Below, piece after piece: positions 22,520 through 55,275 of a DNA stretch of 64,000 nucleotides. The DNA is taken from positions 310,001 through 374,000 of IMG/VR virus record IMGVR_UViG_3300027985_000918; one strand, 5' to 3'. The notes beneath the pieces are model-generated. The model had not been told where the DNA came from. It was given only the letters and a program-made list of their open reading frames with translations, and did not search any database. Numbering within the stretch: the stretch's first letter is position 1; each line of letters begins with the position of its first letter. Both the position numbers and the translations under genes were made by a program.

Positions 22520-22923
22520 TCGTCCCCCTGCCGCTCCATCCAGGCAGAGGCCACCCGGAACACTGCCTCCGGGTCCGAGCTGCGATTCATGCCCCCGCCA
22601 AACGCAGGAGACAGAGCCTCATCCACGAGCTGCTTTTGGGAGAATGGGAGGCGAGCTTCGAGGAAGGTTTCCCCCATTCGGGAAAGGACCAAGGCCGTGC
22701 GATCTAGCACTTCCTCCAGAGCGGCCATTCGGGAGGGGGCATCTACGATCATGTCCCCAGCCACCTGGTACAAGTGCTCCTTCTGGTCGGAGTGCTCCAC
22801 CAGATCCTGTGCCCGGTTGATCAGGTGCCGGAGGCGGTGAGCCTCCAGGCGTGCCTGGGTCACCCCCTCGGTGATCAGTGCCCAGGCAGCCTGAGAACTG
22901 GCGGTTTTTGCGATCTTGCTCAC
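22516..22923 (-). CDS. Hypothetical late (virion) protein
   Basis: KIAKTAS at the N-terminus, RVASAW tag at the C-terminus; GGAGG RBS. Confidence 0.7.
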   Translation of the reverse strand: MSKIAKTASSQAAWALITEGVTQARLEAHRLRHLINRAQDLVEHSDQKEHLYQVAGDMIVDAPSRMAALEEVLDRTALVLSRMGETFLEARLPFSQKQLVDEALSPAFGGGMNRSSDPEAVFRVASAWMERQGDE

Positions 22924-26552: not shown

Positions 26553-26701
26553 CCCTAGGCCCCTCACCGCCTATAGGCTGATCCTGATACTCCGGCTATC
26601 CGTTGCGGGTAGAGGGAACGCCGGGGTCATCGGTTTCGATGTCAGGCAGCACCCCGCTTCTGGTGCTCACTGGCCTGCAAAACGACTTCCAGGGAGTCAC
26701 G

Positions 26702-29048: not shown

Positions 29049-29921
29049 TCAGCGGGTGACGGTCAGGCGGGCCAGGCCACGGGGGTTGTAGGCCCCGATG
29101 CCGAGGTTCTCAAACACAGAGAACCCGATGGTGCGGGCCTTGGGGTCGTCCGCCGAGAGGACGGTCAGCTCGGTACGGACCGGAATGCGACCGAAGTGCT
29201 CGGCTTCGCAGCACAGGTACACGGTCCCGACCGGAACGAGGCGGCTGACGACGATCTGGGCGCCGTAGATGACACCCATGAGACCCGTCTTCAGCAGGAC
29301 CGCCTGGGTTTCGATGTCCAGAATGTCCCGACCGAACTTACGGATGTCGGCATAGTCACGGGCATTCATGTACACCCGGGCCACACGGAGGTCCCAGCGT
29401 TCGATCAGGGCAAAGGCATCGGCCAGCACCGCACCGGAGATCGGAGCGATGACGGGGATGTCCGGGTTAAGCTGACCCGGCAGGCTGTCGAACCCGGCGG
29501 TGGCGATGGAGTCCATGATGGCGAAGACACGCTCGTCCTCGGCAGCCTGGACCTGCGCCCGAGCCAGATCCTGAGCACGCTCGATGAGATCGAAACGGCG
29601 CTCCTTGATCTGGGTGAGCGGGATCTCCGGGTTCGAGGCGATCTCGAACAGGGGGAAGATCACACGCCTGGGCTTCGTGATCGCCAGGATGTTCTGACCC
29701 TCTTCCCCTAGGACAAAGGCGGTGACATCCGGGTCCTTGTCGTAGATGGGGAGGGCCCCATCCGGAAGCTGTTCCACAAGGAACGTCTTGCGCCCGACGG
29801 CAGCGTAGTCACGCCGGGTGCGGAGGGGCGACGTCATGCTGGCGGCCAACTTCGCCCGTCCCATCGGGGTCTGGATCAGCTCGCCAATCAGACGCTGCTT
29901 AACTGCGTTGGTGATGGCCAT
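29049..29921 (-). CDS. Major capsid protein (HK97 fold, no delta domain)
   Basis: Position after protease, scaffold and decoration genes; PLRTRRDY...LPDGALPIYDKD...FEIASNPEI...AEDERVF...NPRG; strong RBS and terminator. Confidence 0.88.
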   Translation of the reverse strand: MAITNAVKQRLIGELIQTPMGRAKLAASMTSPLRTRRDYAAVGRKTFLVEQLPDGALPIYDKDPDVTAFVLGEEGQNILAITKPRRVIFPLFEIASNPEIPLTQIKERRFDLIERAQDLARAQVQAAEDERVFAIMDSIATAGFDSLPGQLNPDIPVIAPISGAVLADAFALIERWDLRVARVYMNARDYADIRKFGRDILDIETQAVLLKTGLMGVIYGAQIVVSRLVPVGTVYLCCEAEHFGRIPVRTELTVLSADDPKARTIGFSVFENLGIGAYNPRGLARLTVTR

Positions 29922-32393: not shown

Positions 32394-33944
32394 TCAGTGC
32401 TGTCCCCGGAGGGCCTGGCCCCTCCGAGACATGATGTTGCCGAGCCGCAGGAACACCCTGGCCTCAGCGGTACTGGGCTTGCGCCCAAGGGCGGAGGCAC
32501 AAGCCCCCAGGTAATCACGACCCGTACTGTACCCACTGGGGGCTCCCGCCCTCAGAACGGCCCGGTACAAGTTCCTATCGATCTCGATGCCAGCAGCCTT
32601 GTCCAGCGTTGCCACCCCCTCAATGAGAGCGATGTCCGAGCTGGCCGTCCTGGCCAATACCCGGATAGCAGCTTCGTGCTGGACGGTATCGTTGGGTGCC
32701 GTGGAGTCGTTGACCGCACGGGATGTGTCTTCCTCCCGCATCTGGTCCTTGATCTTCCGCTTCACCCGATCCTGCATGTACTGGGTGAGCTCTTCCTCGG
32801 TCTCCTGGAGGGGAGACCCAGACTGAGCCGGGGCAACAGCGCCACCCTCACCTTCGTCCTCACCCACCTCGTCGCCCTCATCCTCCCATCCGGCAATGAA
32901 ACTGTCTCTCCCCACCGCAAGAACATCCGAGTCCGTCAGAGGACCAGATGTGACCCTTCCCACCACACGAGCGTCCTGGTGGAAACGATCCTCCAAGATG
33001 CTAATGTCCGTGGCGGAACGCCCCATTGTGGCAGCACGCTGCATCTGGTTGGCATCCCACTCCGGGGGCGGGGAGTTGAGAACCTTGGCAGCCCTGTCGA
33101 GCATAACCTGGGTAGGTTCCAACACGTTCCGCAGGACTGCTCCCGTGAACGCTGGAGTTTCCACCCAACTTGCCTCGATGAACCGCACACCGCCAGTGGG
33201 ATCGATGCTATCGTGCCCACACAACTCCGCCACACGGTGCTGGCGGCCCAACTCGTCATAGAACACGGTGCCCTTGGCATACTTGATATGGGCACACATC
33301 TCAGTTTCGTCGGCAGCCCAGTGTCCACACTTGGTACAAATCGTGCCATCCACCGTACAGCCCATGGACATAGTGCCCATCTTTCCGGACTCAATGGCCT
33401 TAACCAGCTCAGTGTGCTTGCGGTCCGTGGCAACGAGGATGTCAATGTAAATGCTATCCCCGATATCACGGGCCACGGCGTCGATGATCCGACCCCGGGA
33501 CTGTGATTCGATCTGAACGTGCTCAACGAAGTTGTGCCCGCCCACAAACGTCTCGAACGCCTTGAGCAAAACCGGGCGGCTCCAGGCATCGAGGTTGTTG
33601 TTGATGAACTTGTCGCAGACCGGCTTTACCCGGTAATCCCCATACCTGCGGTTCACTCGGAACCCATCCTCCATCTGGTGGCCGAGCTTAACCCCCTGGG
33701 GGGACTCGACATCGACCGACGCCACAATGGTGGCATGGGTCAGGAGGAAATTCTTGGGGTTGAACGGCTTACCCAAGAGTTGAGTGGCCCGTTCCACCAG
33801 GTTGCTGGCCATGGCGACCTTGGTGGGCCTGAAATCCTTGGCGATCTTCCCGCTCTGCCTTGCAGCAGCTCGGACATTGCCCCACTGCTTCCGCCCAATT
33901 GACGGATTGGCGATTGTGGCATAGGCGTACTTCATCATCGGCAT
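32394..33944 (-). CDS. Prohead (capsid maturation) serine protease with Zn-finger insert
   Basis: NNNLDAW, NFVEH, GRIID, TMSMGC, CTKCG...CAH, EASWVETPAF; canonical gene position. Confidence 0.8.
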   Translation of the reverse strand: MPMMKYAYATIANPSIGRKQWGNVRAAARQSGKIAKDFRPTKVAMASNLVERATQLLGKPFNPKNFLLTHATIVASVDVESPQGVKLGHQMEDGFRVNRRYGDYRVKPVCDKFINNNLDAWSRPVLLKAFETFVGGHNFVEHVQIESQSRGRIIDAVARDIGDSIYIDILVATDRKHTELVKAIESGKMGTMSMGCTVDGTICTKCGHWAADETEMCAHIKYAKGTVFYDELGRQHRVAELCGHDSIDPTGGVRFIEASWVETPAFTGAVLRNVLEPTQVMLDRAAKVLNSPPPEWDANQMQRAATMGRSATDISILEDRFHQDARVVGRVTSGPLTDSDVLAVGRDSFIAGWEDEGDEVGEDEGEGGAVAPAQSGSPLQETEEELTQYMQDRVKRKIKDQMREEDTSRAVNDSTAPNDTVQHEAAIRVLARTASSDIALIEGVATLDKAAGIEIDRNLYRAVLRAGAPSGYSTGRDYLGACASALGRKPSTAEARVFLRLGNIMSRRGQALRGQH

Positions 33945-33947
33945 GGA

Positions 33948-34583
33948 TCAGCCCTCCATCATGCGCTGGCGGGCCAACCGGATACTGGCGAACGGCTTAG
34001 AGGCTGCCTCTGCCTCAGCCACATCGTCGATGTACTCCGGGTGACCGATGATGTCACACTCCTTGACCAAGAACAGGCACTCCGGGCACCCAAGCAGCCG
34101 CTCGCTCACCCCCCCCTGCCTCTTGTAGGAGGCGGGGCGGAGGATGGCTTCCTTGCACTTTGGGCAGTTGAAATTGCCTGCATCAATCTCCGTCTGGGTT
34201 GCCTTGTAGTGGCGATCCTTGGCGGCCCAGTAGAGGGACTTCTTGACGAACGCCTGGGCAACCCGGGCGGCGCTCTCAGGGGTGAGACTGGCGGCCTTGG
34301 GGCCGCCGGGGACGCTGACCGTCCCGGCACCCCCGGGCACGTTATCATGCTCGGGGTCTGCGGGGATCACGTCCTTCTGCTCATACCGCTGAAGCTCTTC
34401 GACTGGTTTGCGCTCGGACCCGTGAGGCCACTCCACATCCACCATGCCAATGGCGGGATAGACCGTCGTGACACGGCCGATTAGGTCATGGTTGCCGCTC
34501 AGGAATGGGTATACCCGGTCACCAACCTCAAACTCCAAAGCCCGCTGTTGGTAATCCACATATGCAGAGCGGTCGTTACTCAC
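33948..34583 (-). CDS. Hypothetical virion protein (SH3-like plus zinc ribbon)
   Basis: FEVGDRV...GRV...VDVEW; CPKC...CPEC; RVAQAF tag between the two domains. Confidence 0.7.
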   Translation of the reverse strand: MSNDRSAYVDYQQRALEFEVGDRVYPFLSGNHDLIGRVTTVYPAIGMVDVEWPHGSERKPVEELQRYEQKDVIPADPEHDNVPGGAGTVSVPGGPKAASLTPESAARVAQAFVKKSLYWAAKDRHYKATQTEIDAGNFNCPKCKEAILRPASYKRQGGVSERLLGCPECLFLVKECDIIGHPEYIDDVAEAEAASKPFASIRLARQRMMEG

Positions 34584-34607: not shown

Positions 34608-35243
34608 TCAGGAGAACAGGTTGAACCCGTGGCTGGCCTTCTTGCCGGCGTCCTTCTCGTCGTCCTCGTCCTCGCCGTCAGAAGCCCAACGGCTACCGGC
34701 CTTCTTGCCAGCGTCCTTCTCGTCGTCCTCGTCCTCGTCGTCTGAAGAAGACTTGATGACGCCCGTGGCGAGTTCGAGAGCCTTGGCAGCCTTGGCAGCC
34801 CCTGCGGGGGTCAACTTGGCGCTCTTCAGAGCGGCCAACAGAGCCTTGAAGTTGGCCTGGACACCAGGGTTGGCGGGCTGAGGATCGAGGTCCGGTGCGG
34901 CGATGTTGCCACTCTCGACCTCCTCTCGAAGCTCCCGGCGCTCCTGCTGGGAAAACTCACCCCTCATGTAGGACTCATCCGAGTCACCCTCCAGGGGGCC
35001 GGCCTTCTCGACACCAATCTCGGAGGGATTGAAATCGGCGTTCTTGAGATTGCCCTTCTGATCTCGCACCAGCCCGGCGGTCCGCTCGATGCGGTCGGCC
35101 AAAAGGTCGCACCGATGAGCGAAATCGGAAGCCACCTTCTCGGGGATGCCGAGAGAAGTGTGCTCCATCTGGATGAGGGTGGCAATGCGATCCAGAGCGG
35201 CGCTAGCCTGGAATGCGCCCTTCTTTGTGATGCTCTTGGGCAT
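34608..35243 (-). CDS. Hypothetical head-assembly protein
   Basis: Start MPKSIT with AGGAG RBS; tandem EDEDDEKDAGKKA repeat. Confidence 0.7.
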   Translation of the reverse strand: MPKSITKKGAFQASAALDRIATLIQMEHTSLGIPEKVASDFAHRCDLLADRIERTAGLVRDQKGNLKNADFNPSEIGVEKAGPLEGDSDESYMRGEFSQQERRELREEVESGNIAAPDLDPQPANPGVQANFKALLAALKSAKLTPAGAAKAAKALELATGVIKSSSDDEDEDDEKDAGKKAGSRWASDGEDEDDEKDAGKKASHGFNLFS

Positions 35244-35308
35244 GTCTTCGTGCTCCTGTTCCATCAAGACCTCAACCAAGTATCAGCTCGGGCATTCCAA
35301 GCCCTCCG

Positions 35309-35362: not shown

Positions 35363-38300
35363 TCAACTGGGTAGTTCCTTGTCCTCTGTTACGGCCCTCA
35401 TATACGCCCGGAACGCATCCGGTCTCATCTCCCGGATGCGCTTCCTCTCCTTGGGGTCGGTGACGTTTTTGAGCCATTCCTGCTTCTTCTGTTCCGGGGT
35501 CTTCTCAGGATTCTGCTTGTCTTCCCGGACCTTCCGACCGTCATCCTTCGGCTCGACCTTCTGATCGAGAACCGAGAGGTCTCCAGTCTCACTCACATGG
35601 CGGACCCGAGCTACGTTCGGATTCATCTTGTCGGGCACCGTTCCCGACAGCTTCTCTGCGGTAGACATCGTCAAACGCAGATCCTGAACCTGGACTCCCT
35701 CCCCTGCCTTTAGGCAGCTCTCCAGATCCTCCTGGGTCACAGCCTTGGCGATGCAGTGTGCCAGCTCATCGGCGGCCCCCTTGAGGGCCTTGTCGTCTGT
35801 CTTGGCCTGGCGTACCCTTTCGGCCAGACTCTCAGGGTCTGTGGTAGGCTTAGAAGTGGGCTTGGTTTTACCCTTCCCCTTCTCATCGGTCTCCTTCCCC
35901 TTGTGGAAAGCGTTCAGGAACCCTTGGGTTACAGTCATGTCGTTTAGGGCCAGCATCTTGAGCACATCTCGGGCGAACGCTCTCCCCTCTGCCGTGATGT
36001 GGTTGTCCTCATCATCATCCGTAAGAACCCTACCGATGGCCTCATAGGGGCTATTATCCCCTGCCACAGTTTCCACCAATTCATCGTCCGACATGATGTC
36101 CAGAGCATCCCTGACCTTGACCCTCCCCTCAGGGCTGTACAAATCAGAAGCCCCCTTCAACAGTACGTCTTCGTCCCCAAGGACAGCCAGAGACTGAGCC
36201 ATCCTCTGGAAGCTCTTAGACATCTCCTCCGTGCCGGAGAGCTGGCGACCTTGTACAGCAGCGGCCAACATCATCCCCGACTTGATAGCATCCAGCTCGA
36301 TGTACTCGTCTGATTCGGGGTCGGCCTTATCCAATTCCTGCTTGAGCTGGTCGGCAGCAGCATCCAGAAGCCCCGGCCCCGCCTTACGGAACTGGTGGTA
36401 AGCCTCAAGAGACCGCCCATGCAGCTCCTCCGCCGTTTTGTTGTTGTTGTTGACCGCCCGGCCACCAACAAGACGAGGGTTAGCCACCACCTTCGTGGCG
36501 AACACATACTCAGCCAGGCGCTTCGCTCGCACCTGGGGGGCAGCCTCCGCCAACCCCTTGGTCCCCCTCTTGAGAGCAGACTGAGCCCTCTTCAAGACAT
36601 CCACAGTCAACCCCCCATCCTCCGCACGAGCGCTCAGAAGCTGTCCCATGTGAGAAGCATAAGCCTCTGCCAGCTCCTGCTTAGCGGAGGCCACATTCTT
36701 CTCGTACTCTGCCTTAAGCCTCTGGATATGATCCCGAACCCCCTGAGCACTCTCCTGATCTTCCGGAACCTCTGGGTACTCCGGCTCTTCCGGCCACAAA
36801 TCACCCAGGTCCATTCCCTGGACGGCCTTGTCGAAATCAGCAAGCTGTCTCTGCTGCTTGGCCCTCTGCTGTTCCCGTTCCTTAACCTTTCGCTCTTCCG
36901 CTTGCTGGGCAGCGACCTCTGGATCTTCTTCCTCCTCACCTTCCCCGCCCCCTTCAGCCCTCCTCTTAGCGGATTCTTCATCGGGAGCCGACGTGGGCTG
37001 CTTGGACTTGGGAGGCCAAACACCCCAGCCGTTCTCCGTCTGCCAGTAGTCTCCCTCTTTGTGTTCAGCATCCTGTGGGACCTTCCCAGCAATGCGAATA
37101 GGAGGACCTGACAAGACCATCAACATCCGGTCACCGGCATCCGTGATAGCGGCAACCTTCTTGTAGTTCAGGGAGAGATCGGGATCCTTCTCAGCCTTCC
37201 CCGTGTCGTCCACGTCCGGGTCATACTCGTCCATCCGATTGCGACGAAGGTCCTGCCGGGGAGGCTTCTTCGATGGCTTCGGACGATTCATCCGCTCTAC
37301 TTCCTCGTTCTCCTTCTCCCCCTCATCTTTGGTCGCCTGCCGGTACAGGTAAGCCGAAGCCACTCTCCCGGCTGCCTTCCTGATCCACTCTGCAGCCAGG
37401 CGGAGGGACGTACTTGCCCCCTTGCCCAGCCGGACCGGATCTTCGTCAGAGCCCTTCTTGTCAAGACGTTTCATGACCTCGCCGGAGGCGAGGTACTTGT
37501 CGGCCAAACCGGGGACCAGGTACTGGCTCTTAAGGGTCGAGGGTTCATGGCCCACCGCCTTGGCGGTCTCTTTTAGAGCCTGCTCAAATTCCTTCTTGAG
37601 CAGCTTCCCCCGCTCCTTCTTATCCTCGGGCAGCTCCCCACCCTTGGAGCGGATATCCTTGAGACGGCTCTGCATCTCGGCATTGGCGTGGTACCCCCGC
37701 ATGTCCTTAGCGGTGATGCCGAAAGGCTCCAGGTACTCGTTCACGTCTTCGGCAGAGATATCCCCCGTTAGGCTGTCATTCTCCCCCTTTCCCTCTTTGG
37801 CGGCCTTGAGAGCCGACACCAAAGCCGGATCACTGACAACCTTCTCGTGACTCACGCCGGACTTGCCGACGTACTTGACGGTGACTTTGTTGCCGGAAAA
37901 GGTCAGATGCTTGACCTTCCAACCTGTGACCCCATAGTGCCCATCCTCAGCAGACTCCTCATTGCCGACCCGCTCGTATGTCTCGTCCATGAGGCCAACA
38001 ATCAGGGCCTTTAGCCGGGTGTCCTCGTCCTTGGACTTCAAATCCTTCGACACCTGCGCCCTCAGCTTGGTGATGGATCCACGTAGCTTCTCTACCTGCT
38101 TAGCCTTCTCTCGGTTCCGGAGTTCAATCTGGCCCTCGCTGTACTCGTAGACGGTCGTGGTCCCTTTGCCATCGGCCTTGGGGACCTCCTTCTTCTTCTG
38201 ATACTTGGCGGACACCCGAAGAACGGCCTCCTTAGAAAGCCCCCCCGCTGTTGCGGCGGCCTCATCGTAGCGGAGCTTGAACAGTTTGATCTCCATGTCC

Positions 38301-40483
38301 TGCTTGCGCCCCTTGGGCACTGGCTCCACGATCACCACAGGTTCCCCAGACTTCTCGTCAGTCTTGAACTCTTTGATAACCCCCTTCTTATTCTTGTACT
38401 TGCCGTACAAGACGGGGTCACCGACATTCAGGGTGAAGGTTTTGGCGATCCGCAGAGCTGCCTCCTTCATCCACTCGTTATCCTCCGGGGGGTACAGCTC
38501 CTGGAGGTGTGGCATCTCATCCTGGAGGCCCGTGTAGACCCCCTTGAGCAAAGTCTTCTTCGCCTGGGTGTTCAGGGCCCTATGGACCCTGTTCCATGTG
38601 GTGGAATTCTCCAGGGCACGGTCCAGGAGGGACATCGAGGCTCCCGCCCAGAGGTTTCCGGCCCCCCCCTGCTCATGGACGTAATCAATCACTTCGTCCA
38701 CGATCTGCTGCATGAACGCCCGGATCTCAGTCGCTTCGTTGTGGTAGGTGTCCTCGTCAAGGTGACTGATTCCCCCTGGGGCAAGAAGGTCCCGGAGGTG
38801 GGTGATTTCATGAATCAGAACCGAGTACACCTCCTTGGCGACCCGGGCCTCATTGTCCAGAAACGCCTTGGGGGACTTGGCAGCATCGAGAGTGACCGTC
38901 ATCTGGTACTTGAACGCATGGCTCCCCTGAACCCTCTGCGTAACTGCCCCCCCTACCACATACTGCCGGGGACCGCTGAAACCCAAGGCCTTGTTTCTGG
39001 ACTCAACCTTGACATCCACAGCCACAAGGGCGCCCTTCACATCCTGGACGACGTACTTAGCGACGACAAAACCCCATGTGTCCGGCCGGAACCCCCGCTG
39101 GGAGTACAGAGAGTCAGAAGGGTCATCTCGAAACCGTAGGTGCTGGGGCAGCACCTGCATGATCTTGTCCGTCAGCCCCTTGGCCTCGACCTTGTTGATC
39201 GGAATAGGACGAGCAGCCCTCTTCTTGGTGTACGCCTGTGCCACTCGGAACACTGCCCCAGCGGTACGCTGCCAGCTTTCTGAGGTCATCCCCATCCGCT
39301 TAGCCGGCACCTGTCCTTTGCCCACCGTCCCCTGTCCCCGGGCAAGCCTCATAAGGGGCTTGCCATACAAACCGGACATGCTCAGCGCCCTCTGCATCCT
39401 GAACTTGCCCACATCGGACAGCTTCTCGGGGGCCGACATGAAGGCAACGAAAGACTCTGCAAAGTCCTCCCTCTCGTTGGTCTTGGCGTACTCAGTGGGC
39501 ACATGTAGGGCTTCGATAGCCTGGGCCACCGCAGAGTCACCCTGGGCATACTCTGCCACCTGCTCTTCGGTGAGAACAGGGTGGTGGTAGCTAGAGTACG
39601 AGTCCAGCACTCCCATCTTGTCCTGCTTCTGGCGCCATGCCCGGGAAAGAACCTGGTCGAACCTCTCAGTCCCAGGAGTCACCCCCTGGTTCTCCTCGAC
39701 GTGCTTCTGGAACCAGGACCGCAGAGCCTTATTCCGGCTGAGCCGCTTAGCGATCTGCTTCAGATGGTAGACGTTAGCATTCCCCATCCAGAAGGTCAGA
39801 TCTTCTATGAGCCCCCGAAAATCCTGCTGGGCCTCGGAGCCCATCTCCAGAAAGGGGTCGGAGCTGCTGTACTTCTCCATGCCTGCACGGAGCTTGTGAA
39901 CCTGAGGCATCCCCCAGACCTCAATCTCGTCGAAGGACCAGGAACCAGTCGGGATCGGACCCTCCCACTCAGTGTCGAGACCGTCGAGGTATTCAAGGGT
40001 GGTGTGGGGGCGGTAAACCGTCCAGCTATCCGTTACCTCGACCCCAATGTCCTGGATAGCCGACTTGAGACGGTCCCGAAGCTCTGCCATGCGGTGACTG
40101 AATCGAATGGGGAGAATAGCAACCCGCCGCTGCTGGGATTCATGGGTGAAGTAGTCCAACCCCTCCAGTTTGGCCTGTACGGGCCCCCTCAGTTCTTCGG
40201 ACACCACCCGCTGGCAGGTCTCGATGAACTCGTCCTCATGACCCTTGACGTTGCCAACGTAGAGCAGAGTGACGTGGGGCGGACTCTTGTCGTTACCCGA
40301 CTTTTTCACCGGAAACTGGCTGGAAATCCCCCGGGGTAGAGGAATGAACAGCCCTGTCCACTCCGTGCTGTCGCCGGTCTTTTTGCCGTCATCGGGACCG
40401 GCGTGCCTTTTAGCCCAATCAGCCTTGACCTGCTGCCGGACGGCCAATCTGCGAGCCTGTGCTTGAAGAATAGGGTGCTCCAC
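35363..40483 (-). CDS. 1706-aa multidomain virion protein: 2H phosphoesterase, zincin metallopeptidase(s), SH3-like, topoisomerase IB, helical C-terminus
   Basis: PHVTL and PHTTL; TEYAKTNEREDFAESF; HEITH...EIRAF; VGDPVLYGKYKNKKG; YERVGN, VGKSG, AKDMR, VGH, SQYL. Directly downstream of portal. Confidence 0.88.
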   Translation of the reverse strand: MEHPILQAQARRLAVRQQVKADWAKRHAGPDDGKKTGDSTEWTGLFIPLPRGISSQFPVKKSGNDKSPPHVTLLYVGNVKGHEDEFIETCQRVVSEELRGPVQAKLEGLDYFTHESQQRRVAILPIRFSHRMAELRDRLKSAIQDIGVEVTDSWTVYRPHTTLEYLDGLDTEWEGPIPTGSWSFDEIEVWGMPQVHKLRAGMEKYSSSDPFLEMGSEAQQDFRGLIEDLTFWMGNANVYHLKQIAKRLSRNKALRSWFQKHVEENQGVTPGTERFDQVLSRAWRQKQDKMGVLDSYSSYHHPVLTEEQVAEYAQGDSAVAQAIEALHVPTEYAKTNEREDFAESFVAFMSAPEKLSDVGKFRMQRALSMSGLYGKPLMRLARGQGTVGKGQVPAKRMGMTSESWQRTAGAVFRVAQAYTKKRAARPIPINKVEAKGLTDKIMQVLPQHLRFRDDPSDSLYSQRGFRPDTWGFVVAKYVVQDVKGALVAVDVKVESRNKALGFSGPRQYVVGGAVTQRVQGSHAFKYQMTVTLDAAKSPKAFLDNEARVAKEVYSVLIHEITHLRDLLAPGGISHLDEDTYHNEATEIRAFMQQIVDEVIDYVHEQGGAGNLWAGASMSLLDRALENSTTWNRVHRALNTQAKKTLLKGVYTGLQDEMPHLQELYPPEDNEWMKEAALRIAKTFTLNVGDPVLYGKYKNKKGVIKEFKTDEKSGEPVVIVEPVPKGRKQDMEIKLFKLRYDEAAATAGGLSKEAVLRVSAKYQKKKEVPKADGKGTTTVYEYSEGQIELRNREKAKQVEKLRGSITKLRAQVSKDLKSKDEDTRLKALIVGLMDETYERVGNEESAEDGHYGVTGWKVKHLTFSGNKVTVKYVGKSGVSHEKVVSDPALVSALKAAKEGKGENDSLTGDISAEDVNEYLEPFGITAKDMRGYHANAEMQSRLKDIRSKGGELPEDKKERGKLLKKEFEQALKETAKAVGHEPSTLKSQYLVPGLADKYLASGEVMKRLDKKGSDEDPVRLGKGASTSLRLAAEWIRKAAGRVASAYLYRQATKDEGEKENEEVERMNRPKPSKKPPRQDLRRNRMDEYDPDVDDTGKAEKDPDLSLNYKKVAAITDAGDRMLMVLSGPPIRIAGKVPQDAEHKEGDYWQTENGWGVWPPKSKQPTSAPDEESAKRRAEGGGEGEEEEDPEVAAQQAEERKVKEREQQRAKQQRQLADFDKAVQGMDLGDLWPEEPEYPEVPEDQESAQGVRDHIQRLKAEYEKNVASAKQELAEAYASHMGQLLSARAEDGGLTVDVLKRAQSALKRGTKGLAEAAPQVRAKRLAEYVFATKVVANPRLVGGRAVNNNNKTAEELHGRSLEAYHQFRKAGPGLLDAAADQLKQELDKADPESDEYIELDAIKSGMMLAAAVQGRQLSGTEEMSKSFQRMAQSLAVLGDEDVLLKGASDLYSPEGRVKVRDALDIMSDDELVETVAGDNSPYEAIGRVLTDDDEDNHITAEGRAFARDVLKMLALNDMTVTQGFLNAFHKGKETDEKGKGKTKPTSKPTTDPESLAERVRQAKTDDKALKGAADELAHCIAKAVTQEDLESCLKAGEGVQVQDLRLTMSTAEKLSGTVPDKMNPNVARVRHVSETGDLSVLDQKVEPKDDGRKVREDKQNPEKTPEQKKQEWLKNVTDPKERKRIREMRPDAFRAYMRAVTEDKELPS

Positions 40484-40501: not shown

Positions 40502-40532
40502 CTACCTTCGGCAGAGCTATAAACAAATCACA
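40502..40532 (-). promoter_or_regulatory. Putative class-I (late) promoter
   Basis: TGT-GATTTGTT-TAT-N13-GTAG, upstream of the giant protein. Confidence 0.6.
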
Positions 40533-42435
40533 GCGCCGGTGATGGCCTGTGCCCCTTGAAGCGGGCCTCCTTCCCGGACACTGGCTTAGTCAGGCCACTC
40601 TCCAGCTCACCCTGAAGCTCGGGATCAATGTGGGTGTCGCTCGCCAGAGCTTCCTCAGCGGCCTCTCGGATAGCTCTCTTGATGGCTTCCTGGAAAGTAT
40701 CCTTGAGGAAACGGTGAATCTCGTTCTGCTGTACTGAGCCAAACCGGGACATGCCCTCTTCCTTCGGTTTGGTATACTTCAGACCCAGGACATCGGCCAC
40801 TCGCTGGACAGCGTCGGAGGACTCCGCCAAGGCGTCCCCGACACGGCTGTAGACCGCCCGCAAGACTTCATTGAACGTAGCGTCCTGGAGTGTAAAAGTG
40901 TCCCTCTCCAGCTTCTCTCGGACGGTGTCGGCATCAAGGTTCAGCAAATCCAGAATGGTCTCGATGTCCAAACTCCCCTTCTGGTAGAGATTGAACAATG
41001 TGTCGAATGTCTCCTGGTTATCCCGCAAAGCCAAACGGGTGAACGACAGCCTCGGATGGATGACCACCTCTTCGCCGTCTTCGTCGTACTCGATGAACCC
41101 CATGCGGCGGCACATCGGCTCCAAAAGTTGCCGGTCTACGAAATCCTGAAGCAGCTCACGCAGCAACAGATAGCGGACGTTGATCACCTCCAAGTGGATG
41201 CGGTCCCCACTGTAGCTCGACTCACCGGACAGCAAAGATTCAGTGACCCCGAGACCGGCATAAAGCTGCCGGTCAGTGAGGTCGTACTCGGAGGACAGGT
41301 CCAGCAAGCGGGAGTCCGCCCCCCCGCCCCGCTCTTCCCAGTTGACCTGGAAGTTCGTGATGACACTATAGTCCGGGTCCTGAAGAGCCAGATCCACCTG
41401 GTCCCGCAGCTCTTCCGTCTGCTCGGCGTTCATGTCCTCCGCCCAGATGATGCGGTAGGGGGTCATGTGCCGGGAGGCGATGGATGTCTGGGCCTGGCGG
41501 AGTTTATCCCGGAACACCAGGACTCGGAGACACCGCTGAAGGATAGACTTCCCCCGAGCCTCGTACTGACTCTTCTTGCGGGCCAGGTAGTGGCAGAAGC
41601 TGCCCGCCTCAGGGGTGGTGTTCAAGGGGATGTTCTCACCCCGGAGGACGTAGTCCACAACCTCGGTAGGCATGGACTCGACCACCTCTCGGGCTCGGAG
41701 ATCTCCCTGAGTAGCCCTCTCGATGATGGCCTTGGTCTTGCTATCGGGAATCAGCTCAATGAGGCGCTTGTCCGTGAAGGGGAACGCCTCCATCTGAATC
41801 TGCTCGGGGGGAAGAACTCGGAGAGCCGACCAGCCCTTGTAATTCTTCTTCACCCACTGGACCATCCTCTTTCGGGCATCCGGGTAAGGCCGCTCTTCCT
41901 CTACCAGGGACCCGTCAGCAGCAATCTCACGATATGTCTCATGAGTCACCTCCCGGGGCATATCTGGACTCGTGTCCTCTGCGAACACGAATACCTCCCC
42001 GACGAGGTAATATTCGTGGACCACCTCCAAAAGACGGTGCAGCAGACCAATATAGCGAACCCACCGCTCACAGAACCTCATGGACGCCTCAGCCAGCTTC
42101 TTGTTCTTGGCCTTAGGCTTGCGGAGGCGTAGCTTGGAAAGGGGGAGTTCCCCGTGCAGATCGATGGCCTGACCCACAAAGGGGTCGTTGTCGTAAAAGA
42201 AGCGGAAATAGTTCCGCATCTCATCTACGGACTGAGGCAGCTCCAGGAAATCTGGGCTCAGCTCGGGACTGTAGAAGTTGCCCCCCGAGCCAACCATGGC
42301 CCCACCCGTAGCAGGGTAGGCCATCTTGAGGCGGGCTGTTCCGGTAACGAGCTTGCCGGGTTTGCCTACCTTGACCTTGTCCCGCTCGGGAAGGGTAGCC
42401 ACCTTGACTGTATGCTTGGGATCGTTCTTCTTCAT
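40528..42435 (-). CDS. Portal protein
   Basis: FYDNDPFVGQAIDLHGELP, GEVFVF, YEARGKSILQRC, LYAGLGV; downstream of terminase. Confidence 0.82.
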   Translation of the reverse strand: MKKNDPKHTVKVATLPERDKVKVGKPGKLVTGTARLKMAYPATGGAMVGSGGNFYSPELSPDFLELPQSVDEMRNYFRFFYDNDPFVGQAIDLHGELPLSKLRLRKPKAKNKKLAEASMRFCERWVRYIGLLHRLLEVVHEYYLVGEVFVFAEDTSPDMPREVTHETYREIAADGSLVEEERPYPDARKRMVQWVKKNYKGWSALRVLPPEQIQMEAFPFTDKRLIELIPDSKTKAIIERATQGDLRAREVVESMPTEVVDYVLRGENIPLNTTPEAGSFCHYLARKKSQYEARGKSILQRCLRVLVFRDKLRQAQTSIASRHMTPYRIIWAEDMNAEQTEELRDQVDLALQDPDYSVITNFQVNWEERGGGADSRLLDLSSEYDLTDRQLYAGLGVTESLLSGESSYSGDRIHLEVINVRYLLLRELLQDFVDRQLLEPMCRRMGFIEYDEDGEEVVIHPRLSFTRLALRDNQETFDTLFNLYQKGSLDIETILDLLNLDADTVREKLERDTFTLQDATFNEVLRAVYSRVGDALAESSDAVQRVADVLGLKYTKPKEEGMSRFGSVQQNEIHRFLKDTFQEAIKRAIREAAEEALASDTHIDPELQGELESGLTKPVSGKEARFKGHRPSPAL

Positions 42436-46316: not shown

Positions 46317-48298
46317 CACTTGCCCTCCCCGACATTCAACAAAATGCCATCGAACAGTAGCTCTCCCAGCTTTTCGATGTCGGGGGTGTTGTCCAGCGTA
46401 ACGTCCATGTTGGCCACCAACCCGAACTCCGAAACGATACTGGTGTGCTGATTGGTGAACAGAGAGGCGGTGGCCTCAGCATCCGAAGCGTTGGCCCCCT
46501 TGATGGCCTCTTCCTGAAGAGCCCTGAGATCGACCCCCTCCAAAGCGGCGGCCTCGATGAGCGGCTTATTGTAGACGGAGCAGTGACCACTCCCATCCAA
46601 CATGGCTTTCTTGTGGACACAGGACCCGCAGCGCCCCATCGCCAACACCCGCTTGACCTGGTTGGTCCGATGCTTGCTGGCAGCTTCCTTGCAGCCCGTG
46701 TACCCCGTCGGAGAGGCATAGGCTGCAGCGTCCACGTAGACGTGTCCCGCCAACCCCTCATGCTGGGCACGAAGCTCTCGGATATCCTGGGCAGCCTTCC
46801 GCAAAAGGTCAGTGTTCCAACGGGCCTGGATTAGCTGGTCGAGATCCTTCCCCATCCATCCCTCATTCATCGCCCTCCGAGTCCAAAGAGCCAGCCGCTC
46901 AAACTCCGCCGTCTTCGTGGTCCCGCTGCCCTCCTTCCGGCTCAGCTCAGCACCCTTTTTGACGGCCAGGCCGGCACCCTCATAGGTTCCCGTCTTTGGG
47001 GCGGAAACCCACTCGGAGGCCCTCTTGAGCATATCGTCGGTACCGAGCTTCCGCAGCTCATACACCTGGCGAGAGGTCAGATCTCCAGATGCCAGCCACT
47101 GAGAGACCTTCGCCAGAGCCTTGGCCCGACGGGCCTGGGACCCATCGTTGACCCGGATCTCCTCCATCACCTCGGGGGTAGACGCCTGAAACTGGCGTAC
47201 CGCCTCGGCCAGGGTGACAGTGTCAGCAGGTCGGACCTCGACCGGCTTGGGCCTCTCGACATGGAAAGCATAGGCGGCCGTGGGGCCCTTCTTGAACGCC
47301 CCCCGCAGAGCCTCCTGAGGACCCTTGGACAAATCCAGCTCGTAGCCCGCTGCCTTGAGGAGAGGGCCATAGTGCCGGAGAGCCTGCTCCCACGGGACAG
47401 CGGGAACGGCCTGCATCCCTAGCTTGGTCCCGATGGAGGGGTCATCGGTGATGACGTACCGGGCTCCCCGAGCCCGCCTCTTGATCTCCTGAACCCACTT
47501 GCCGTTCTTGATTCCGGGGAAAGCGTTGGCCCGGATGAACACGTTGCCGGCGAGGCCGATGTCCCTGCTCAGGTGAGCCACGACACCTCTGGTGTTGGAT
47601 GCGTCATCACCCAGAGCAGCCACCAAATCCCGCTTGATCTCGTCAAGCGGCTTACCAAAGTGAGCGTCCCGGACAGCCTTCATGGCAGCAGCCCGGACCA
47701 GGTGCTCATCGGAATCCTGCTTGGGGCCGGGAGTTGCCGGATGTGGACTGTTGTTCATCTGCTGGTGGTAGCGCTCCGCCTCCAGGTCCTTAGCCGGGAT
47801 ACGAGAAACGCCATCCGTCCTTCGGTTTACCCCCCAGGCTTCCTCCAGCTCTGCGATACCCTTGTCAACGGGGTTATCGGGGAGTCTGTTCGGGTCCTGA
47901 CCCTGAGTCGGGTCAAGCCAAAGCAGATCCATGATAGCGGCGTTCTTGTCGTGCCCTTCCTCGACAGTGAACATGGTCCCCAGGTGGAGGCCTCCCTCGT
48001 TGTCCTGCATAAGGGCGGCCTCGTCCAAAGGAGCCTCGACGGAAGCACCCATGATGGAAGCCACCATGTCCTGTGGGCGCTTGTAGCTACCCCGATGGGC
48101 ACCACTCCCCGGTGCGGGTCCTGGAGAGGCCCCAGGCAGACCAGGCCGCTCCTTAACTCCCTCACCCATCGTTTGGTCGAAATGGTATCCGTCCAAGCCG
48201 TAGTTCGAGCCCAGACTCCACTGGAAATCTTCGCTAGGCATGTTGGATTCGGCCAGGATCTCGGCCGCCCAATCGAGGGCCTTCTTCTTGTTGCTCAT
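46316..48298 (-). CDS. Large hypothetical virion protein with a Cys cluster
   Basis: 660 aa; GC...CGSC...CSVYNKPL near the C-terminus; in the late operon. Confidence 0.7.
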   Translation of the reverse strand: MSNKKKALDWAAEILAESNMPSEDFQWSLGSNYGLDGYHFDQTMGEGVKERPGLPGASPGPAPGSGAHRGSYKRPQDMVASIMGASVEAPLDEAALMQDNEGGLHLGTMFTVEEGHDKNAAIMDLLWLDPTQGQDPNRLPDNPVDKGIAELEEAWGVNRRTDGVSRIPAKDLEAERYHQQMNNSPHPATPGPKQDSDEHLVRAAAMKAVRDAHFGKPLDEIKRDLVAALGDDASNTRGVVAHLSRDIGLAGNVFIRANAFPGIKNGKWVQEIKRRARGARYVITDDPSIGTKLGMQAVPAVPWEQALRHYGPLLKAAGYELDLSKGPQEALRGAFKKGPTAAYAFHVERPKPVEVRPADTVTLAEAVRQFQASTPEVMEEIRVNDGSQARRAKALAKVSQWLASGDLTSRQVYELRKLGTDDMLKRASEWVSAPKTGTYEGAGLAVKKGAELSRKEGSGTTKTAEFERLALWTRRAMNEGWMGKDLDQLIQARWNTDLLRKAAQDIRELRAQHEGLAGHVYVDAAAYASPTGYTGCKEAASKHRTNQVKRVLAMGRCGSCVHKKAMLDGSGHCSVYNKPLIEAAALEGVDLRALQEEAIKGANASDAEATASLFTNQHTSIVSEFGLVANMDVTLDNTPDIEKLGELLFDGILLNVGEGK

Positions 48299-48978
48299 GC
48301 CGTCCTCCTTGCCGAGTACCGAGCTGCAAGGCGAGATGCCTGCACATGGATATTACCGTCGGCAGAGGCCAGTCTGGGCTTTCCGTCGGTCACCTTATCA
48401 TCGTCCCGATCCGCCTCGGACTCTTCCTGCTCCGCCCACTCCTCCGGGTCCTCCCGAATTTCCTCCACTTCGTCCATGATCTGCTTGACCTCATCCCGAT
48501 CACGGGGGTCTCCACCAGAGTCATCGACCCGAGGATTCCAATGGACGGCCTGCATCTCGTCGTACATCGAGTCGGAAACAGCGCTCAACGCCTCCAGGAC
48601 GTTCGTGTAGAGCTTACGGATGTCCTTAATTGTCAGAATATAACCCTTCCCACCAATGGACCCGTCGGGGCTGATCCGCTGACTCTTGATCTTGTTGAAA
48701 ATGGTGTAGGCACTCTGGGCATGCCCCAGTGCCATCAAAGTAGCTCTCAGGGACTTGGCCAGGGGCTCCAGGTTCTTGGGGTTGAACTCGTAATCGGGGT
48801 CAATCATCCGCTCAGATGCCCCGGCGGGATTCCACGCCCATTCCTTGGAGTCCCCCCCACGATCCTTGATGAAGCGGACTTCACCGGCCGTGCGGTCCAT
48901 GGCGGCACGTTTCATATGTGCCGAAGCCACCCGGCGGATGGCTTCGGCGTCAAGCTGTGGAGTCCTCGTCGTGGACAT
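48295..48978 (-). CDS. Hypothetical virion protein with tags at both ends
   Basis: RRVASAHMKRAA...RTA at the N-terminus; RLAARY...RRTA at the C-terminus. Confidence 0.72.
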   Translation of the reverse strand: MSTTRTPQLDAEAIRRVASAHMKRAAMDRTAGEVRFIKDRGGDSKEWAWNPAGASERMIDPDYEFNPKNLEPLAKSLRATLMALGHAQSAYTIFNKIKSQRISPDGSIGGKGYILTIKDIRKLYTNVLEALSAVSDSMYDEMQAVHWNPRVDDSGGDPRDRDEVKQIMDEVEEIREDPEEWAEQEESEADRDDDKVTDGKPRLASADGNIHVQASRLAARYSARRTA

Positions 48979-48996: not shown

Positions 48997-49026
48997 CTAC
49001 TGAGCGAAACCTATAAACCAAATACC
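48997..49026 (-). promoter_or_regulatory. Putative class-I (late) promoter
   Basis: GGT-ATTTGGTT-TAT-N12-GTAG. Confidence 0.65.
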
Positions 49027-54172: not shown

Positions 54173-54481
54173 TTACCAAACCCCTGTTGTCTCAAAACCC
54201 CGCCTCTCGAACCAGCTCTGAAGAGACAGCATAGCTTCCCGATTCGAGGACCACAGAGTCACACAGTCGAAACTCTCTCGGATGCCGAGGTCTGGGATGG
54301 TAGGCACCCCCGCCATCGCCACCTTGCCATCTCTCTGGGATCGGAGCAGCCCGGGGATGTAGCGGTAATCCTTCGCCCCGTACAAGACCGAGAATCGAAA
54401 CTCAGCGGTGGCGATGCGGCTGACCCACCTCCGGGCCACTCGCCTTGCCATGACGATCCTCTTCTCGTTATCCTGGGACAT
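54173..54481 (-). CDS. Hypothetical protein, first gene of the late operon
   Basis: RRVARRWVSRIA leader; AGGAG RBS. Confidence 0.7.
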   Translation of the reverse strand: MSQDNEKRIVMARRVARRWVSRIATAEFRFSVLYGAKDYRYIPGLLRSQRDGKVAMAGVPTIPDLGIRESFDCVTLWSSNREAMLSLQSWFERRGFETTGVW

Positions 54482-55180: not shown

Positions 55181-55275
55181 GCGTGCTCCCCGGCTAAACC
55201 CCCAAGAAGGGCTTTCTGCACAGCTCAAACAGACCAACCGACCTTCCAACCATACCCGACAACCGGGCACTGGCC

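What the first reader, a model, noticed from the sequence alone, without database searches (positions are those of the whole stretch)
35363..40483. Giant multi-enzyme virion polyprotein with a tag or cleavage site at most domain junctions
Seen order: leader (RRLA..KRHA), 2H phosphoesterase (~40360-39900), zincin remnant, RTA..RVAQAY..KRA (39213-39270), HEITH zincin, KEA.RIAKTF, SH3-like, KEA.RVSAKY, topoisomerase IB (~38150-37480), RLAAEW.RKA.RVASAY.RQA, charged core, KVA, helical C-terminus. It occupies the slot right after portal, where head morphogenesis (MuF-like) genes often sit, and has its own late promoter. Known: polyvalent proteins of phages and plasmids combine zincins and nucleic-acid enzymes for delivery with the DNA. 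New here: explicit repeated linkers implying processing into separate enzymes, like beads added to a conserved core.
Basis: partly seen in the sequence, partly recalled or inferred. Interest (0 to 1): 0.85.

Follow-up and report, generated by a model that had tools for sequence, protein, structure and literature searches.

The report
Tagged multi-enzyme head protein of huge phage
A 402-kb phage encodes, next to its portal gene, a 1,706-residue string of enzymes whose modules are separated by a short conserved helix (RVAxRY) that also sits on the ends of other proteins of these phages, so it looks like a shared address label for enzymes packed with the DNA.

Summary
Window 35363-40483 (-) is one intact 1,706-aa ORF between the portal gene and the prohead protease and capsid genes of a 402-kb phage contig. 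It contains an intact 2H phosphoesterase, an HExxH zincin-like module, a Tudor/SH3-like barrel and a pox-like type IB topoisomerase with all five catalytic residues. A near-invariant PPRxDLRR segment and a 450-aa all-helical C-terminal domain with no known fold follow. The repeated linker is real. R-V-A-[AS]-[RK]-[YFW] occurs 5 times here (0.2 expected) and 244 times in 120 relatives (27 expected). It lies at module boundaries and at protein ends.

The same tag caps unrelated small proteins of these phages. In a 485-kb relative the topoisomerase and 2H modules are separate tagged genes. Relatives swap many enzyme modules (RNA repair, NUDIX, ART, GNAT) around the PPRxDLRR/C-terminal core.

Processing into separate enzymes is plausible, because [KR]xA[GS] elements lie between tag and core, but it is not shown. 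The tag behaves more like a docking label than a bare cleavage site. Packaging into the virion is inferred from gene order only. This is a new variant of the known polyvalent, packaged-effector theme.

The parts
35363..40483 (-). Whole ORF, 1,706 aa (~190 kDa), GTG start
40516..40526 (-). TTGTTTATAGC element 38 nt upstream of the start. A near-identical element lies 37 nt upstream of gene 48295-48978. Candidate promoter, weak evidence.
40352..40483 (-). Leader, aa 1-44: degenerate tag RRLAVRQ (PSSM 9.0), then KRHA|G just before the 2H module
39884..40351 (-). 2H phosphoesterase, aa 45-200; HxT motifs at H70 and H160
39308..39736 (-). Only a non-significant match (E=0.8) to the Glu-ligand helix of a solved zincin.
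39221..39262 (-). Tag 1 (RVAQAY), flanked by RTA|G and KRA|A; predicted short helix in a low-confidence linker
38486..39211 (-). Zincin-like module, aa 425-666; H558-E-I-T-H, E583
38426..38467 (-). Tag 2 (RIAKTF), preceded by KEA
38249..38425 (-). Tudor/SH3-like beta-barrel, aa 687-745
38192..38233 (-). Tag 3 (RVSAKY), preceded by KEA. In relatives the form RVAAKYQKKKEVPKADGKGT always opens the topoisomerase module.
37454..38191 (-). Type IB topoisomerase, aa 765-1010; R838, K874, R929, H979, Y988
37340..37417 (-). Tags 4 and 5 in tandem (RLAAEW, RVASAY), with KGA|S, RKA|A and RQA|T
37226..37288 (-). Near-invariant basic-proline segment RPxPxKKPPRxDLRR. It starts the constant core; function unknown.
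37136..37180 (-). DLSLNYK plus a degenerate tag (KVAAIT). In relatives this reads DLSLNYKRVAARWL.
36944..37066 (-). Small beta unit (conserved KPGDxW...GW), pLDDT ~87
36755..36943 (-). Acidic and charged coil
35384..36754 (-). C-terminal all-alpha domain, aa 1244-1700, pLDDT >90. No fold match in PDB or BFVD. Only 195 representatives among 1.84 billion proteins.
48295..48978 (-). Separate 227-aa protein with a tag at each end
33948..34583 (-). 211-aa Tudor-like plus Zn-ribbon protein with a conserved internal tag (RVAQAF); lies between the giant gene and the protease
54173..54481 (-). 102-aa protein with an N-terminal tag (RVARRW); all 35 listed family members, the query included, have it
22516..22923 (-). 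135-aa protein with a C-terminal tag (RVASAW)
40528..42435 (-). Portal protein (context)
32394..33944 (-). Prohead protease candidate, 516 aa (context)
29049..29921 (-). Major capsid protein, 290 aa (context; candidate tag receptor)

Best explanation
The gene encodes a polyvalent head-cargo protein of a huge phage. Independent enzyme modules (2H phosphoesterase, zincin-like module, Tudor/SH3-like barrel, pox-like topoisomerase IB) are strung onto a lineage-specific constant part: the PPRxDLRR segment, a small beta unit, and a novel 450-aa helical domain.

Each module carries a 10-15-residue amphipathic helix, R-V-A-[AS]-[RK]-[YFW]-[LQ]. This helix acts as a portable address label. It docks the module to a common receptor during prohead assembly, and the unusually conserved capsid protein or the portal is the best candidate for that receptor.

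[KR]xA[GS/A] elements lying between tag and module are probably cut by the prohead protease. That would free the enzymes inside the head. They would then enter the host with the DNA. The topoisomerase would relax the incoming 400-kb genome or help early transcription. The 2H enzyme, and in relatives the RNA-repair, NUDIX, ART and GNAT modules, would counter host defences.

Shown: the ORF, domain identities and catalytic residues, the tag statistics and positions, the variable architecture, gene fusion and fission at tags, and synteny.

Inferred: packaging, docking, the receptor, cleavage, ejection and the targets.
For: Domains and catalytic residues. Head-module synteny is conserved in 4 other loci.

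Tag enrichment is 80-fold for RVA[AS]x[YFW]. Positions not fixed by the search pattern also carry information: A/S at +3, R at +4, L/Q at +6, small residues at -2/-3. Each tag copy covered by the N-part model (aa 195-775) is predicted as a short helix in a low-confidence linker.

In all-against-all BLAST, alignment boundaries fall within 10 aa of a tag 5-9 times more often than random. Tags are enriched at protein ends: 13.8% lie in the first 35 aa and 5.2% in the last 35 aa, against 2.4% expected for each.

Unrelated small families carry the tag at their termini (120 and 35 listed members). In the first family, 118 of 120 cores begin [KR]xAG-E[VI]RF. The N-tag sits 11-18 aa outside that point, and C-tags are preceded 4-13 aa by KTAS/KLAS/KMAS. 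Tags therefore lie outside the candidate cut sites at both ends.

In the 485-kb relative LR745208.1, only 11 hits in 10 of 639 ORFs reach the tag score (about 0.4 expected). They include a separate 2H protein, a NUDIX protein and a 508-aa HAD-SAK+TopIB protein. In L003 the 2H+ART part is a separate gene directly upstream of the TopIB gene.

The capsid protein is 82-96% identical across loci whose TerL is 50-76% and whose protease is 42-73% identical. That makes it a suitably conserved receptor for a conserved tag.

Precedent: P1 DarB is 250 kDa, is encoded next to the portal and protease genes, and is packaged through an N-terminal signal within its first 30 residues (PMC9024508).
Against: There are no proteomic or structural data for any member, and no cultured relative was found.

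Two of the four other tagged genes in the window lie outside the head cluster. One sits beside sigma-like and NusG-like genes, so the receptor need not be the capsid.

Only about a quarter of tags in the polyprotein family have a flanking [KR]xA[SGA], and that pattern is short and common.

The protease family could not be assigned beyond PHROG hits, so its specificity is unknown. AlphaFold did not dock the tags onto any domain.

Some junctions in relatives have no tag, for example TopIB-DUF192-RNA ligase-cREC in P0042.
Confidence: 0.5

Rival explanations
1. The RVA[AS]xx[YFW] element is itself the recognition and cut site of the maturation protease (for example RVA|S, like the Ala|Ser sites of assemblin-type proteases). 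It has no docking role, and its only job is to separate the beads.
For: RVA[AS] fits the same [KR]xA[SGA] pattern that is enriched around tags. The 2H module is often preceded by RVAS/RTAS/KSAS without a following aromatic residue. RVA[AS] without the aromatic is still 3-fold enriched. The prohead protease gene lies three genes downstream.
Against: The aromatic residue at +5 and R/K at +4 are integral to the motif: 80-fold enrichment with the aromatic against 3-fold without. The element is predicted helical, not extended. Many copies lie 6-15 residues from a protein end, where cutting achieves nothing. In the 227-aa family a separate [KR]xA[GS] lies between tag and core.
Confidence: 0.15
2. 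The tag is a short linear motif for a hub that is not the capsid. The hub could be a phage or host factor acting inside the infected cell, such as the transcription or replication machinery or a phage compartment. The giant protein would then be an intracellular enzyme scaffold rather than virion cargo.
For: A 102-aa family with an invariant N-terminal tag is encoded beside sigma-like, NusG-like and clamp-loader genes. Tagged genes are dispersed over the 485-kb genome of LR745208.1. Terminal and linker placement is typical of hub-binding motifs (own knowledge).
Against: The polyprotein and its constant core sit between portal and protease in every locus examined. Four of the six tagged genes outside the polyprotein in the first loci scanned (window, L003, L004) lie in the head cluster. 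The enzyme repertoire matches that of known packaged polyvalent proteins (PMC5512222). Genes for packaged proteins are also scattered in other phages (own knowledge of T4).
Confidence: 0.2
3. The repeats are passive helical spacers inherited by duplication or recombination, with no specific partner.
For: They lie in flexible linkers of low model confidence.
Against: The five copies share no DNA-level repeat: 13-18 of 33 nt are identical. The sequence is conserved across proteins that have diverged to 20-30% identity, and it is present on unrelated protein families and at termini.
Confidence: 0.05

Closest known systems
Polyvalent proteins of phages and conjugative elements (Iyer et al. 2017, PMC5512222)
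   Same: Many unrelated enzyme domains in one polypeptide, encoded in a portal-terminase head neighbourhood and predicted to travel with the DNA. Relatives carry the hallmark ART-PolyVal and LPD1 domains. Zincin-mediated processing was already proposed for this class.
   Different: That paper mentions 'topoisomerase' once, in its reference list, and never uses the word 'linker'. The family here is built on a different constant part (PPRxDLRR plus a novel helical domain), is often centred on TopIB, and has a defined repeated tag. Most members lack any zincin.
Phage P1 DarB and the Dar system (PMC9024508)
   Same: A ~250-kDa multi-enzyme anti-defence protein encoded next to the portal and prohead protease genes. 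It is packaged into the head through a short N-terminal capsid targeting sequence.
   Different: DarB has one N-terminal signal and different enzymes. No repeated tag between domains and no shared tag on other cargo has been reported.
T4 internal proteins and Alt with their capsid targeting sequence; ejection proteins of phiKZ/SPN3US (PMC10052503)
   Same: Short leader peptides target cargo to the prohead core and are removed by the prohead protease. Many cargo proteins share one cleavage grammar (own knowledge for T4).
   Different: Those leaders are N-terminal only and the cuts follow Glu. Here the tag is N-terminal, C-terminal or internal, is helical with an aromatic anchor, and the candidate cut motif is [KR]xA|[GS].
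Encapsulin cargo-loading peptides (e.g. PMC8346489)
   Same: A short conserved terminal peptide is shared by different cargo enzymes and binds the inside of an HK97-fold shell. The capsid protein here is small (290 aa) and exceptionally conserved.
   Different: There is no sequence similarity. Binding to the shell was not tested here. Encapsulin cargo is not ejected.
Poxvirus type IB topoisomerase (variola and vaccinia; PDB 2h7f, 1a41)
   Same: These are the best solved-structure matches. The minimal enzyme size and the full R-K-R-H-Y pentad are shared. The poxvirus enzyme is also carried in the virion (own knowledge).
   Different: The phage module lacks most of the poxvirus N-terminal domain; the alignment starts at residue 63 of 314. 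It is embedded in a polyprotein.

Membership tests
Polyvalent proteins (Iyer et al. 2017) | Two or more domains of disparate biochemical activity in one polypeptide | tested here: met
   2H phosphoesterase, zincin-like module and topoisomerase IB
Polyvalent proteins (Iyer et al. 2017) | Phage head (portal-terminase) gene neighbourhood | tested here: met
   TerL, portal, this gene, protease, MCP; conserved in L003-L006
Polyvalent proteins (Iyer et al. 2017) | Hallmark domain families of that study (ART-PolyVal, LPD, MPTase) | tested here: inconclusive
   Found in relatives (PF18760, PF18796). None passes threshold in this protein. The Atlas nearest named cluster for the zincin module is LPD23, at score 0.87 only.
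Polyvalent proteins (Iyer et al. 2017) | Packaged in the virion and delivered with the DNA | not testable with these tools
   No cultured relative and no proteome
Type IB topoisomerase | Significant match to the catalytic core profile | tested here: met
   PF01028, 105.7 bits against a cutoff of 23.7; variola TopIB E=7.8e-15
Type IB topoisomerase | Catalytic Arg-Lys-Arg-His pentad members plus the nucleophilic Tyr | tested here: met
   R838, K874, R929, H979 and Y988 align with vaccinia R130, K167, R223, H265 and Y274 (residue numbering of vaccinia from own knowledge)
2H phosphoesterase | Profile match and two HxT/S motifs | tested here: met
   PF13563, 42.4 bits against a cutoff of 27; H70-V-T and H160-T-T
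Zincin metallopeptidase | HExxH plus a downstream third ligand, conserved among homologues | tested here: met
   HExTHxxD and E-x-R-A are invariant in 8 of 8 aligned sequences
Zincin metallopeptidase | Significant similarity to a curated or solved zincin | tested here: inconclusive
   Pfam Zincin_1 E=0.068, below cutoff. No PDB profile hit. No zincin appears among the top 50 rows listed by Foldseek.
MuF / SPP1 gp7 head morphogenesis proteins | Phage_Mu_F domain | tested here: not met
   No such hit in Pfam or PHROGs for the whole protein or its pieces
Capsid targeting sequences (T4 CTS, P1 DarB N30) | Short peptide sufficient to load a protein into the prohead | not testable with these tools
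   Only positional and comparative evidence is available
Capsid targeting sequences (T4 CTS, P1 DarB N30) | Removal by the prohead protease at a defined site between tag and mature protein | tested here: inconclusive
   [KR]xA[GS] lies between tag and core at both ends in the 227-aa family and is enriched near tags in polyproteins. No cleavage data exist.
Encapsulin-type cargo-loading peptide | The same short peptide on several unrelated cargo proteins, usually terminal | tested here: met
   The tag is on three small protein families, on separate 2H and HAD-SAK+TopIB proteins and, less surely, on a NUDIX protein whose tag overlaps the end of the NUDIX profile match
Encapsulin-type cargo-loading peptide | Binds the inner face of the HK97-fold shell protein | not testable with these tools
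The capsid protein's 82-96% identity is only circumstantial.

The most novel reading that the evidence does not exclude
Huge phages of this lineage use a sequence-defined, portable and cleavable address peptide: an RVAxRY helix set off by [KR]xA|[GS]. It loads a changeable set of enzymes into the capsid, whether those enzymes are fused into one giant protein or encoded separately. This would be a cargo-loading code comparable to encapsulin targeting peptides, but used to inject enzymes into the host. If so, the packaged 'first-strike' proteome of an uncultured phage could be read from its genome alone.
Probability: 0.4. Interest if true: 0.8.

Novelty: new variant of a known kind. Interest (0 to 1): 0.66.

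Why it matters
Which proteins a phage injects with its DNA is normally known only from virion proteomics of cultured phages. A recognisable tag would let the injected enzyme set be predicted for uncultured huge phages.

It would also explain how such polyproteins evolve, by fusion and fission of tag-plus-module units. And it would give a short peptide for loading foreign proteins into large capsids.

The family adds a virion-associated, pox-like type IB topoisomerase and a set of RNA-repair enzymes to the repertoire of likely early counter-defence cargo. It also defines a new conserved domain (the C-terminal helical core) and a near-invariant PPRxDLRR segment, both of unknown function.

Tried and rejected
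- Close relatives in GenBank phages: none by DNA. By protein, only LR745208.1 and weak TopIB-only hits in Xanthomonas and Erwinia jumbo phages, plus a 2H-only hit in Virus Rctr197k.
- MuF domain: absent.
- C-terminal domain fold: no match in PDB or BFVD; best E=0.33 and 0.42. The Atlas gave nothing above 0.62.
- Zincin module and 'remnant' against PDB profiles: no significant hit. Only an E=0.8 match of the NExxFAExF helix to the Glu-ligand helix of a solved zincin.
- Zincin in the same protein as the universal processing enzyme: rejected, because 112 tag-bearing relatives lack HExxH.
- Tags as DNA-level repeats or recombination sites: rejected.
- Conserved cleavage motif at fixed distance from every tag: not found. 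Flanking positions carry little information, and only the [KR]xA[SGA] enrichment stands out.
- Promoter: TTGTTTATAGC with up to 2 mismatches is no more frequent than chance, 5 matches against 3.0 expected. Only two good copies exist, both 37-38 nt upstream of starts, and they are not conserved in L004-L006.
- Protease family assignment by Pfam and PDB: failed.
- Literature: no paper in the library combines 'topoisomerase IB' with 'jumbo phage'.
- The RNR hit in the LR745208.1 tag census (score 13.3, inside the fold) is probably chance.
Full report
**What is there**

Window 35363-40483 on the minus strand is a single uninterrupted ORF of 1,706 codons. It starts at a GTG preceded by GGAGGA with a 6-nt spacer, 44 nt after the stop of the upstream gene. 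The window is part of a 402,383-bp IMG/VR viral contig, so this is a huge phage.

The neighbours on the same strand are:
- a large terminase (43059-45056) and a portal (40528-42435) upstream;
- downstream, an acidic repeat protein of 223 aa, a 211-aa Tudor-like plus Zn-ribbon protein, and a 516-aa protein with a head-maturation-protease PHROG match;
- then 508-aa and 231-aa proteins and a 290-aa major capsid protein.

The same order is found around relatives on contigs of 223, 436, 278 and 485 kb. The gene therefore sits in the head module, in the slot after the portal. No MuF domain is present.

**Domains**

- **2H phosphoesterase.** Pfam finds a 2H phosphoesterase at aa 65-168 (E=9e-11). Both HxT motifs are present, at H70 and H160.
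- **Topoisomerase IB.** Pfam finds a type IB topoisomerase core at aa 788-986 (E=3e-30). The best solved-structure matches are the variola and vaccinia enzymes. The alignment places R838, K874, R929, H979 and Y988 on the poxvirus catalytic Arg-Lys-Arg-His-Tyr.
- **Zincin-like module.** An AlphaFold model of aa 195-775 (mean pLDDT 68) gives a confident sheet-plus-helix module at aa 431-664. HExTHxxD and a downstream Glu are invariant in eight aligned relatives. This is very likely a metallopeptidase, but it matches no curated or solved zincin significantly.
- **Tudor/SH3-like barrel.** Residues 690-733 form a beta-barrel that Foldseek matches to Tudor, chromo and CAP-Gly domains (TM 0.72-0.75 on the target, probability 1.0).
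- **The 'remnant'.** Residues 250-392 are a helical module conserved at 42-60% identity in three relatives (26% in a fourth). It has an invariant Y..N..E.F.E pattern and no HExxH. The resemblance of that helix to a zincin Glu-ligand helix is not significant (E=0.8).
- **C-terminal region.** A model of aa 1040-1706 (mean pLDDT 80.5) shows a small beta unit around aa 1146-1166 and a large all-alpha domain at aa 1244-1700, mostly above pLDDT 90. Neither PDB nor BFVD contains a similar fold.

**The repeated linker**

The pattern R[VILM][AS]xx[YFW] starts at aa 413, 678, 756, 1028 and 1040. These positions lie between the helical module and the zincin module, between the zincin module and the barrel, between the barrel and the topoisomerase, and twice after the topoisomerase. 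Five copies are seen against 0.21 expected, and one of 20,000 shuffles reaches five.

In 120 proteins (this one and its relatives) from public data there are 244 copies against 27 +/- 5 in shuffles. Positions the pattern does not fix are also informative: A/S at +3, R/K at +4, L/Q at +6, small residues at -3/-2. The consensus is therefore a-a-x-R-V-A-[AS]-[RK]-[YFW]-[LQ].

The strict form RVA[AS]x[YFW] is 80-fold enriched, and its reverse is not enriched. The five copies share no DNA-level repeat, so selection acts on the peptide. In the model of aa 195-775, each of the three copies it covers is a short helix flanked by low-confidence segments.

In an all-against-all comparison of the relatives, 22% of alignment starts and 12% of alignment ends fall within 10 residues of a tag, against 2.4% for random positions. 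Mapped Pfam domains in P0028 and P0041 are bracketed by tags. Not every junction has one, for example in P0042.

**Variable beads, constant core**

Relatives are 955-2,970 aa long. They combine the topoisomerase with poly(A) polymerase/CCA-type nucleotidyltransferase, RNA ligase, cREC, HAD-SAK, tRNA-ligase CPD, PAP2, NUDIX, ART-PolyVal, GNAT, ChaC, carbonic anhydrase, DUF5661, LPD1 and inteins.

Coverage of the query by relatives, out of 119:

| Region | Relatives covering it |
|---|---|
| Topoisomerase | 117 |
| Region after the topoisomerase | 40-90 |
| Barrel | 44 |
| 2H | 30 |
| Zincin module | 9 |
| Helical module | 1-4 |

A profile of the C-terminal helical domain finds only 195 representatives among 1.84 billion proteins. 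Of 121 new ones, 59 have the topoisomerase. Many of the others still begin with a tag, PPRxDLR and LSxNYK, followed by the helical domain. The constant part is therefore the PPRxDLRR...helical-domain unit. The topoisomerase is a frequent addition, not an obligatory one.

**Fusion and fission happen at tags**

In L003 a 1,000-aa 2H+ART protein is a separate gene abutting the topoisomerase gene, which itself opens with a tag at residue 10. In LR745208.1 the topoisomerase protein is only 508 aa (HAD-SAK, tag, TopIB) and ends with a tag.

**The tag is not confined to the polyprotein**

In the window it also occurs in four other genes:
- at the C-terminus of a 135-aa protein (22516-22923);
- in the middle of the 211-aa Tudor/Zn-ribbon protein (conserved in four loci);
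- at both ends of a 227-aa protein (48295-48978);
- at the N-terminus of a 102-aa protein (54173-54481).

The 227-aa family has more than 400 members. In 118 of the 120 listed, the conserved core begins [KR]xAG-E[VI]RF. 60 have a strict N-terminal tag upstream of that point, 54 of them 6-21 residues upstream. 56 have a C-terminal tag, and 44 of those have KTAS, KLAS, KMAS or similar 4-13 residues before it. All 35 listed members of the 102-aa family carry the N-terminal tag followed by R[VI]AxAE[YF]RF.

Across 240 polyprotein-family members, 13.8% of 363 tags lie in the first 35 residues and 5.2% in the last 35, against 2.4% expected for each.

In the complete 485-kb genome LR745208.1, only 11 hits in 10 of 639 ORFs reach the tag score (0-1 in shuffles). 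They include a separate 2H protein with two tags, the topoisomerase protein, the Tudor/Zn-ribbon protein and a NUDIX protein. The NUDIX tag overlaps the end of the NUDIX profile match and is less sure. At least two enzyme types that are beads in the polyproteins (2H and HAD-SAK+TopIB), and possibly NUDIX, are thus separately encoded tagged proteins there.

**Docking label or cut site**

Several observations favour a docking helix recognised by a common partner:
- the integral aromatic residue;
- the predicted helicity;
- the alternation of small and charged residues;
- the many copies a few residues from a protein end, where cutting would have no purpose.

[KR]xA[SGA] is 5-9 times enriched at -4 to -12 and +7/+8 from tags in the polyproteins. 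In the 227-aa family such elements lie between tag and core at both ends. That arrangement is the one expected for removable targeting peptides, as in T4 and SPN3US, where propeptides are removed by the prohead protease.

In the giant protein, tag 1 is bracketed by RTA|G and KRA|A, the latter immediately before the conserved start (RPIPI) of the zincin module. Cleavage remains unproven, and the protease could not be assigned to a family of known specificity. A zincin in the same protein cannot be the general processing enzyme, because 112 tag-bearing relatives have no HExxH.

**Receptor**

No partner was identified, and AlphaFold did not dock tags on any domain. One circumstantial pointer exists. 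Across the five loci the capsid protein is 82-96% identical, while TerL is 50-76%, the portal 64-77%, the protease 42-73% and the C-terminal domain 31-53% or undetectable. A tag conserved across the lineage needs a conserved receptor.

Against a capsid destination, two tagged genes lie outside the head cluster, one of them beside sigma-like and NusG-like genes. Proteins needed at the very start of infection could still be packaged.

**Comparison with what is known**

The protein belongs to the class of polyvalent proteins described by Iyer et al. 2017 (PMC5512222). It has multiple unrelated enzymes, a head-gene context, and hallmark domains in relatives. That paper already proposed zincin-mediated processing, but it does not describe topoisomerase IB modules or linkers.

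The closest experimentally studied analogue is P1 DarB. It is a 250-kDa enzyme encoded beside the portal and protease genes and packaged through an N-terminal signal within its first 30 residues.

What is new here:
- the lineage-specific core;
- the pox-like topoisomerase as a frequent passenger;
- a defined tag shared by fused and unfused modules;
- the tag-plus-[KR]xA[GS] arrangement.

No paper in the searched library links topoisomerase IB with jumbo phages.

**Verdict**

It is a new variant of a known kind. Packaging and processing are inferred, and the function of the tag is the interesting open point.

Noticed in passing
window 29049-29921 (-); L003 22328-23200, L004 22910-23785, L005 19562-20437, L006 27901-28776: The 290-aa major capsid protein is 82-96% identical across five huge-phage loci whose terminase, portal and protease are only 42-77% identical. 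This is the reverse of the usual ranking. It has no N-terminal propeptide and contains an internal conserved RVARVY.
   Followed up: partly
window 54554-55270 (-) and 55276-55821 (-): A sigma-70 region-4 protein (E=3.6e-10) and a NusG-like NGN+KOW protein lie side by side, directly upstream of the tagged 102-aa gene and next to clamp-loader and sliding-clamp genes. This may be a phage transcription module.
   Followed up: partly
window 34608-35279 (-): A 223-aa protein right after the giant gene ends in two copies of an acidic repeat (DDEDEDDEKDAGKKA). It is a scaffold-like candidate and is conserved at 39-63% identity in the other loci.
   Followed up: no
window 33948-34583 (-): A 211-aa protein combines an N-terminal Tudor/SH3-like segment, a conserved internal tag (RVAQAFVKKSLYW) and a four-Cys zinc ribbon. 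It is conserved between the polyprotein and the protease in all loci.
   Followed up: partly
window 40516-40526 and 49010-49020 (-): The only two GTTTATAG elements in this 60% G+C window lie 38 and 37 nt upstream of the starts of the giant gene and of the tagged 227-aa gene that opens the terminase-portal block. A related TATAG is present in L003 but not in L004-L006.
   Followed up: partly
giant protein aa 1066-1086 (window 37226-37288): RPxPxKKPPRxDLRR is the most invariant stretch of the whole family outside the topoisomerase: P, PPR, D and L are invariant in 34 of 34 sequences. It also opens the TopIB-less members. No function could be assigned.
   Followed up: partly
relatives P0005, P0013, P0030: Some polyproteins of the family contain intein and LAGLIDADG domains (PF14890, PF14528), so they carry a self-splicing element inside a probable virion protein.
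   Followed up: no
relatives P0025, P0069, P0078, P0083, P0088: Unusual passenger modules appear in the same framework: ChaC (glutathione-degrading), carbonic anhydrase and GNAT acetyltransferases.
   Followed up: no
window 26603-28222 (+), 55784-57256 (-), 60581-61894 (-), 62248-63357 (-): Replication and repair genes flank the head module: an SbcD-like exonuclease, a clamp loader, a sliding clamp and a PD-(D/E)XK nuclease. The window has no tRNA genes.
   Followed up: no
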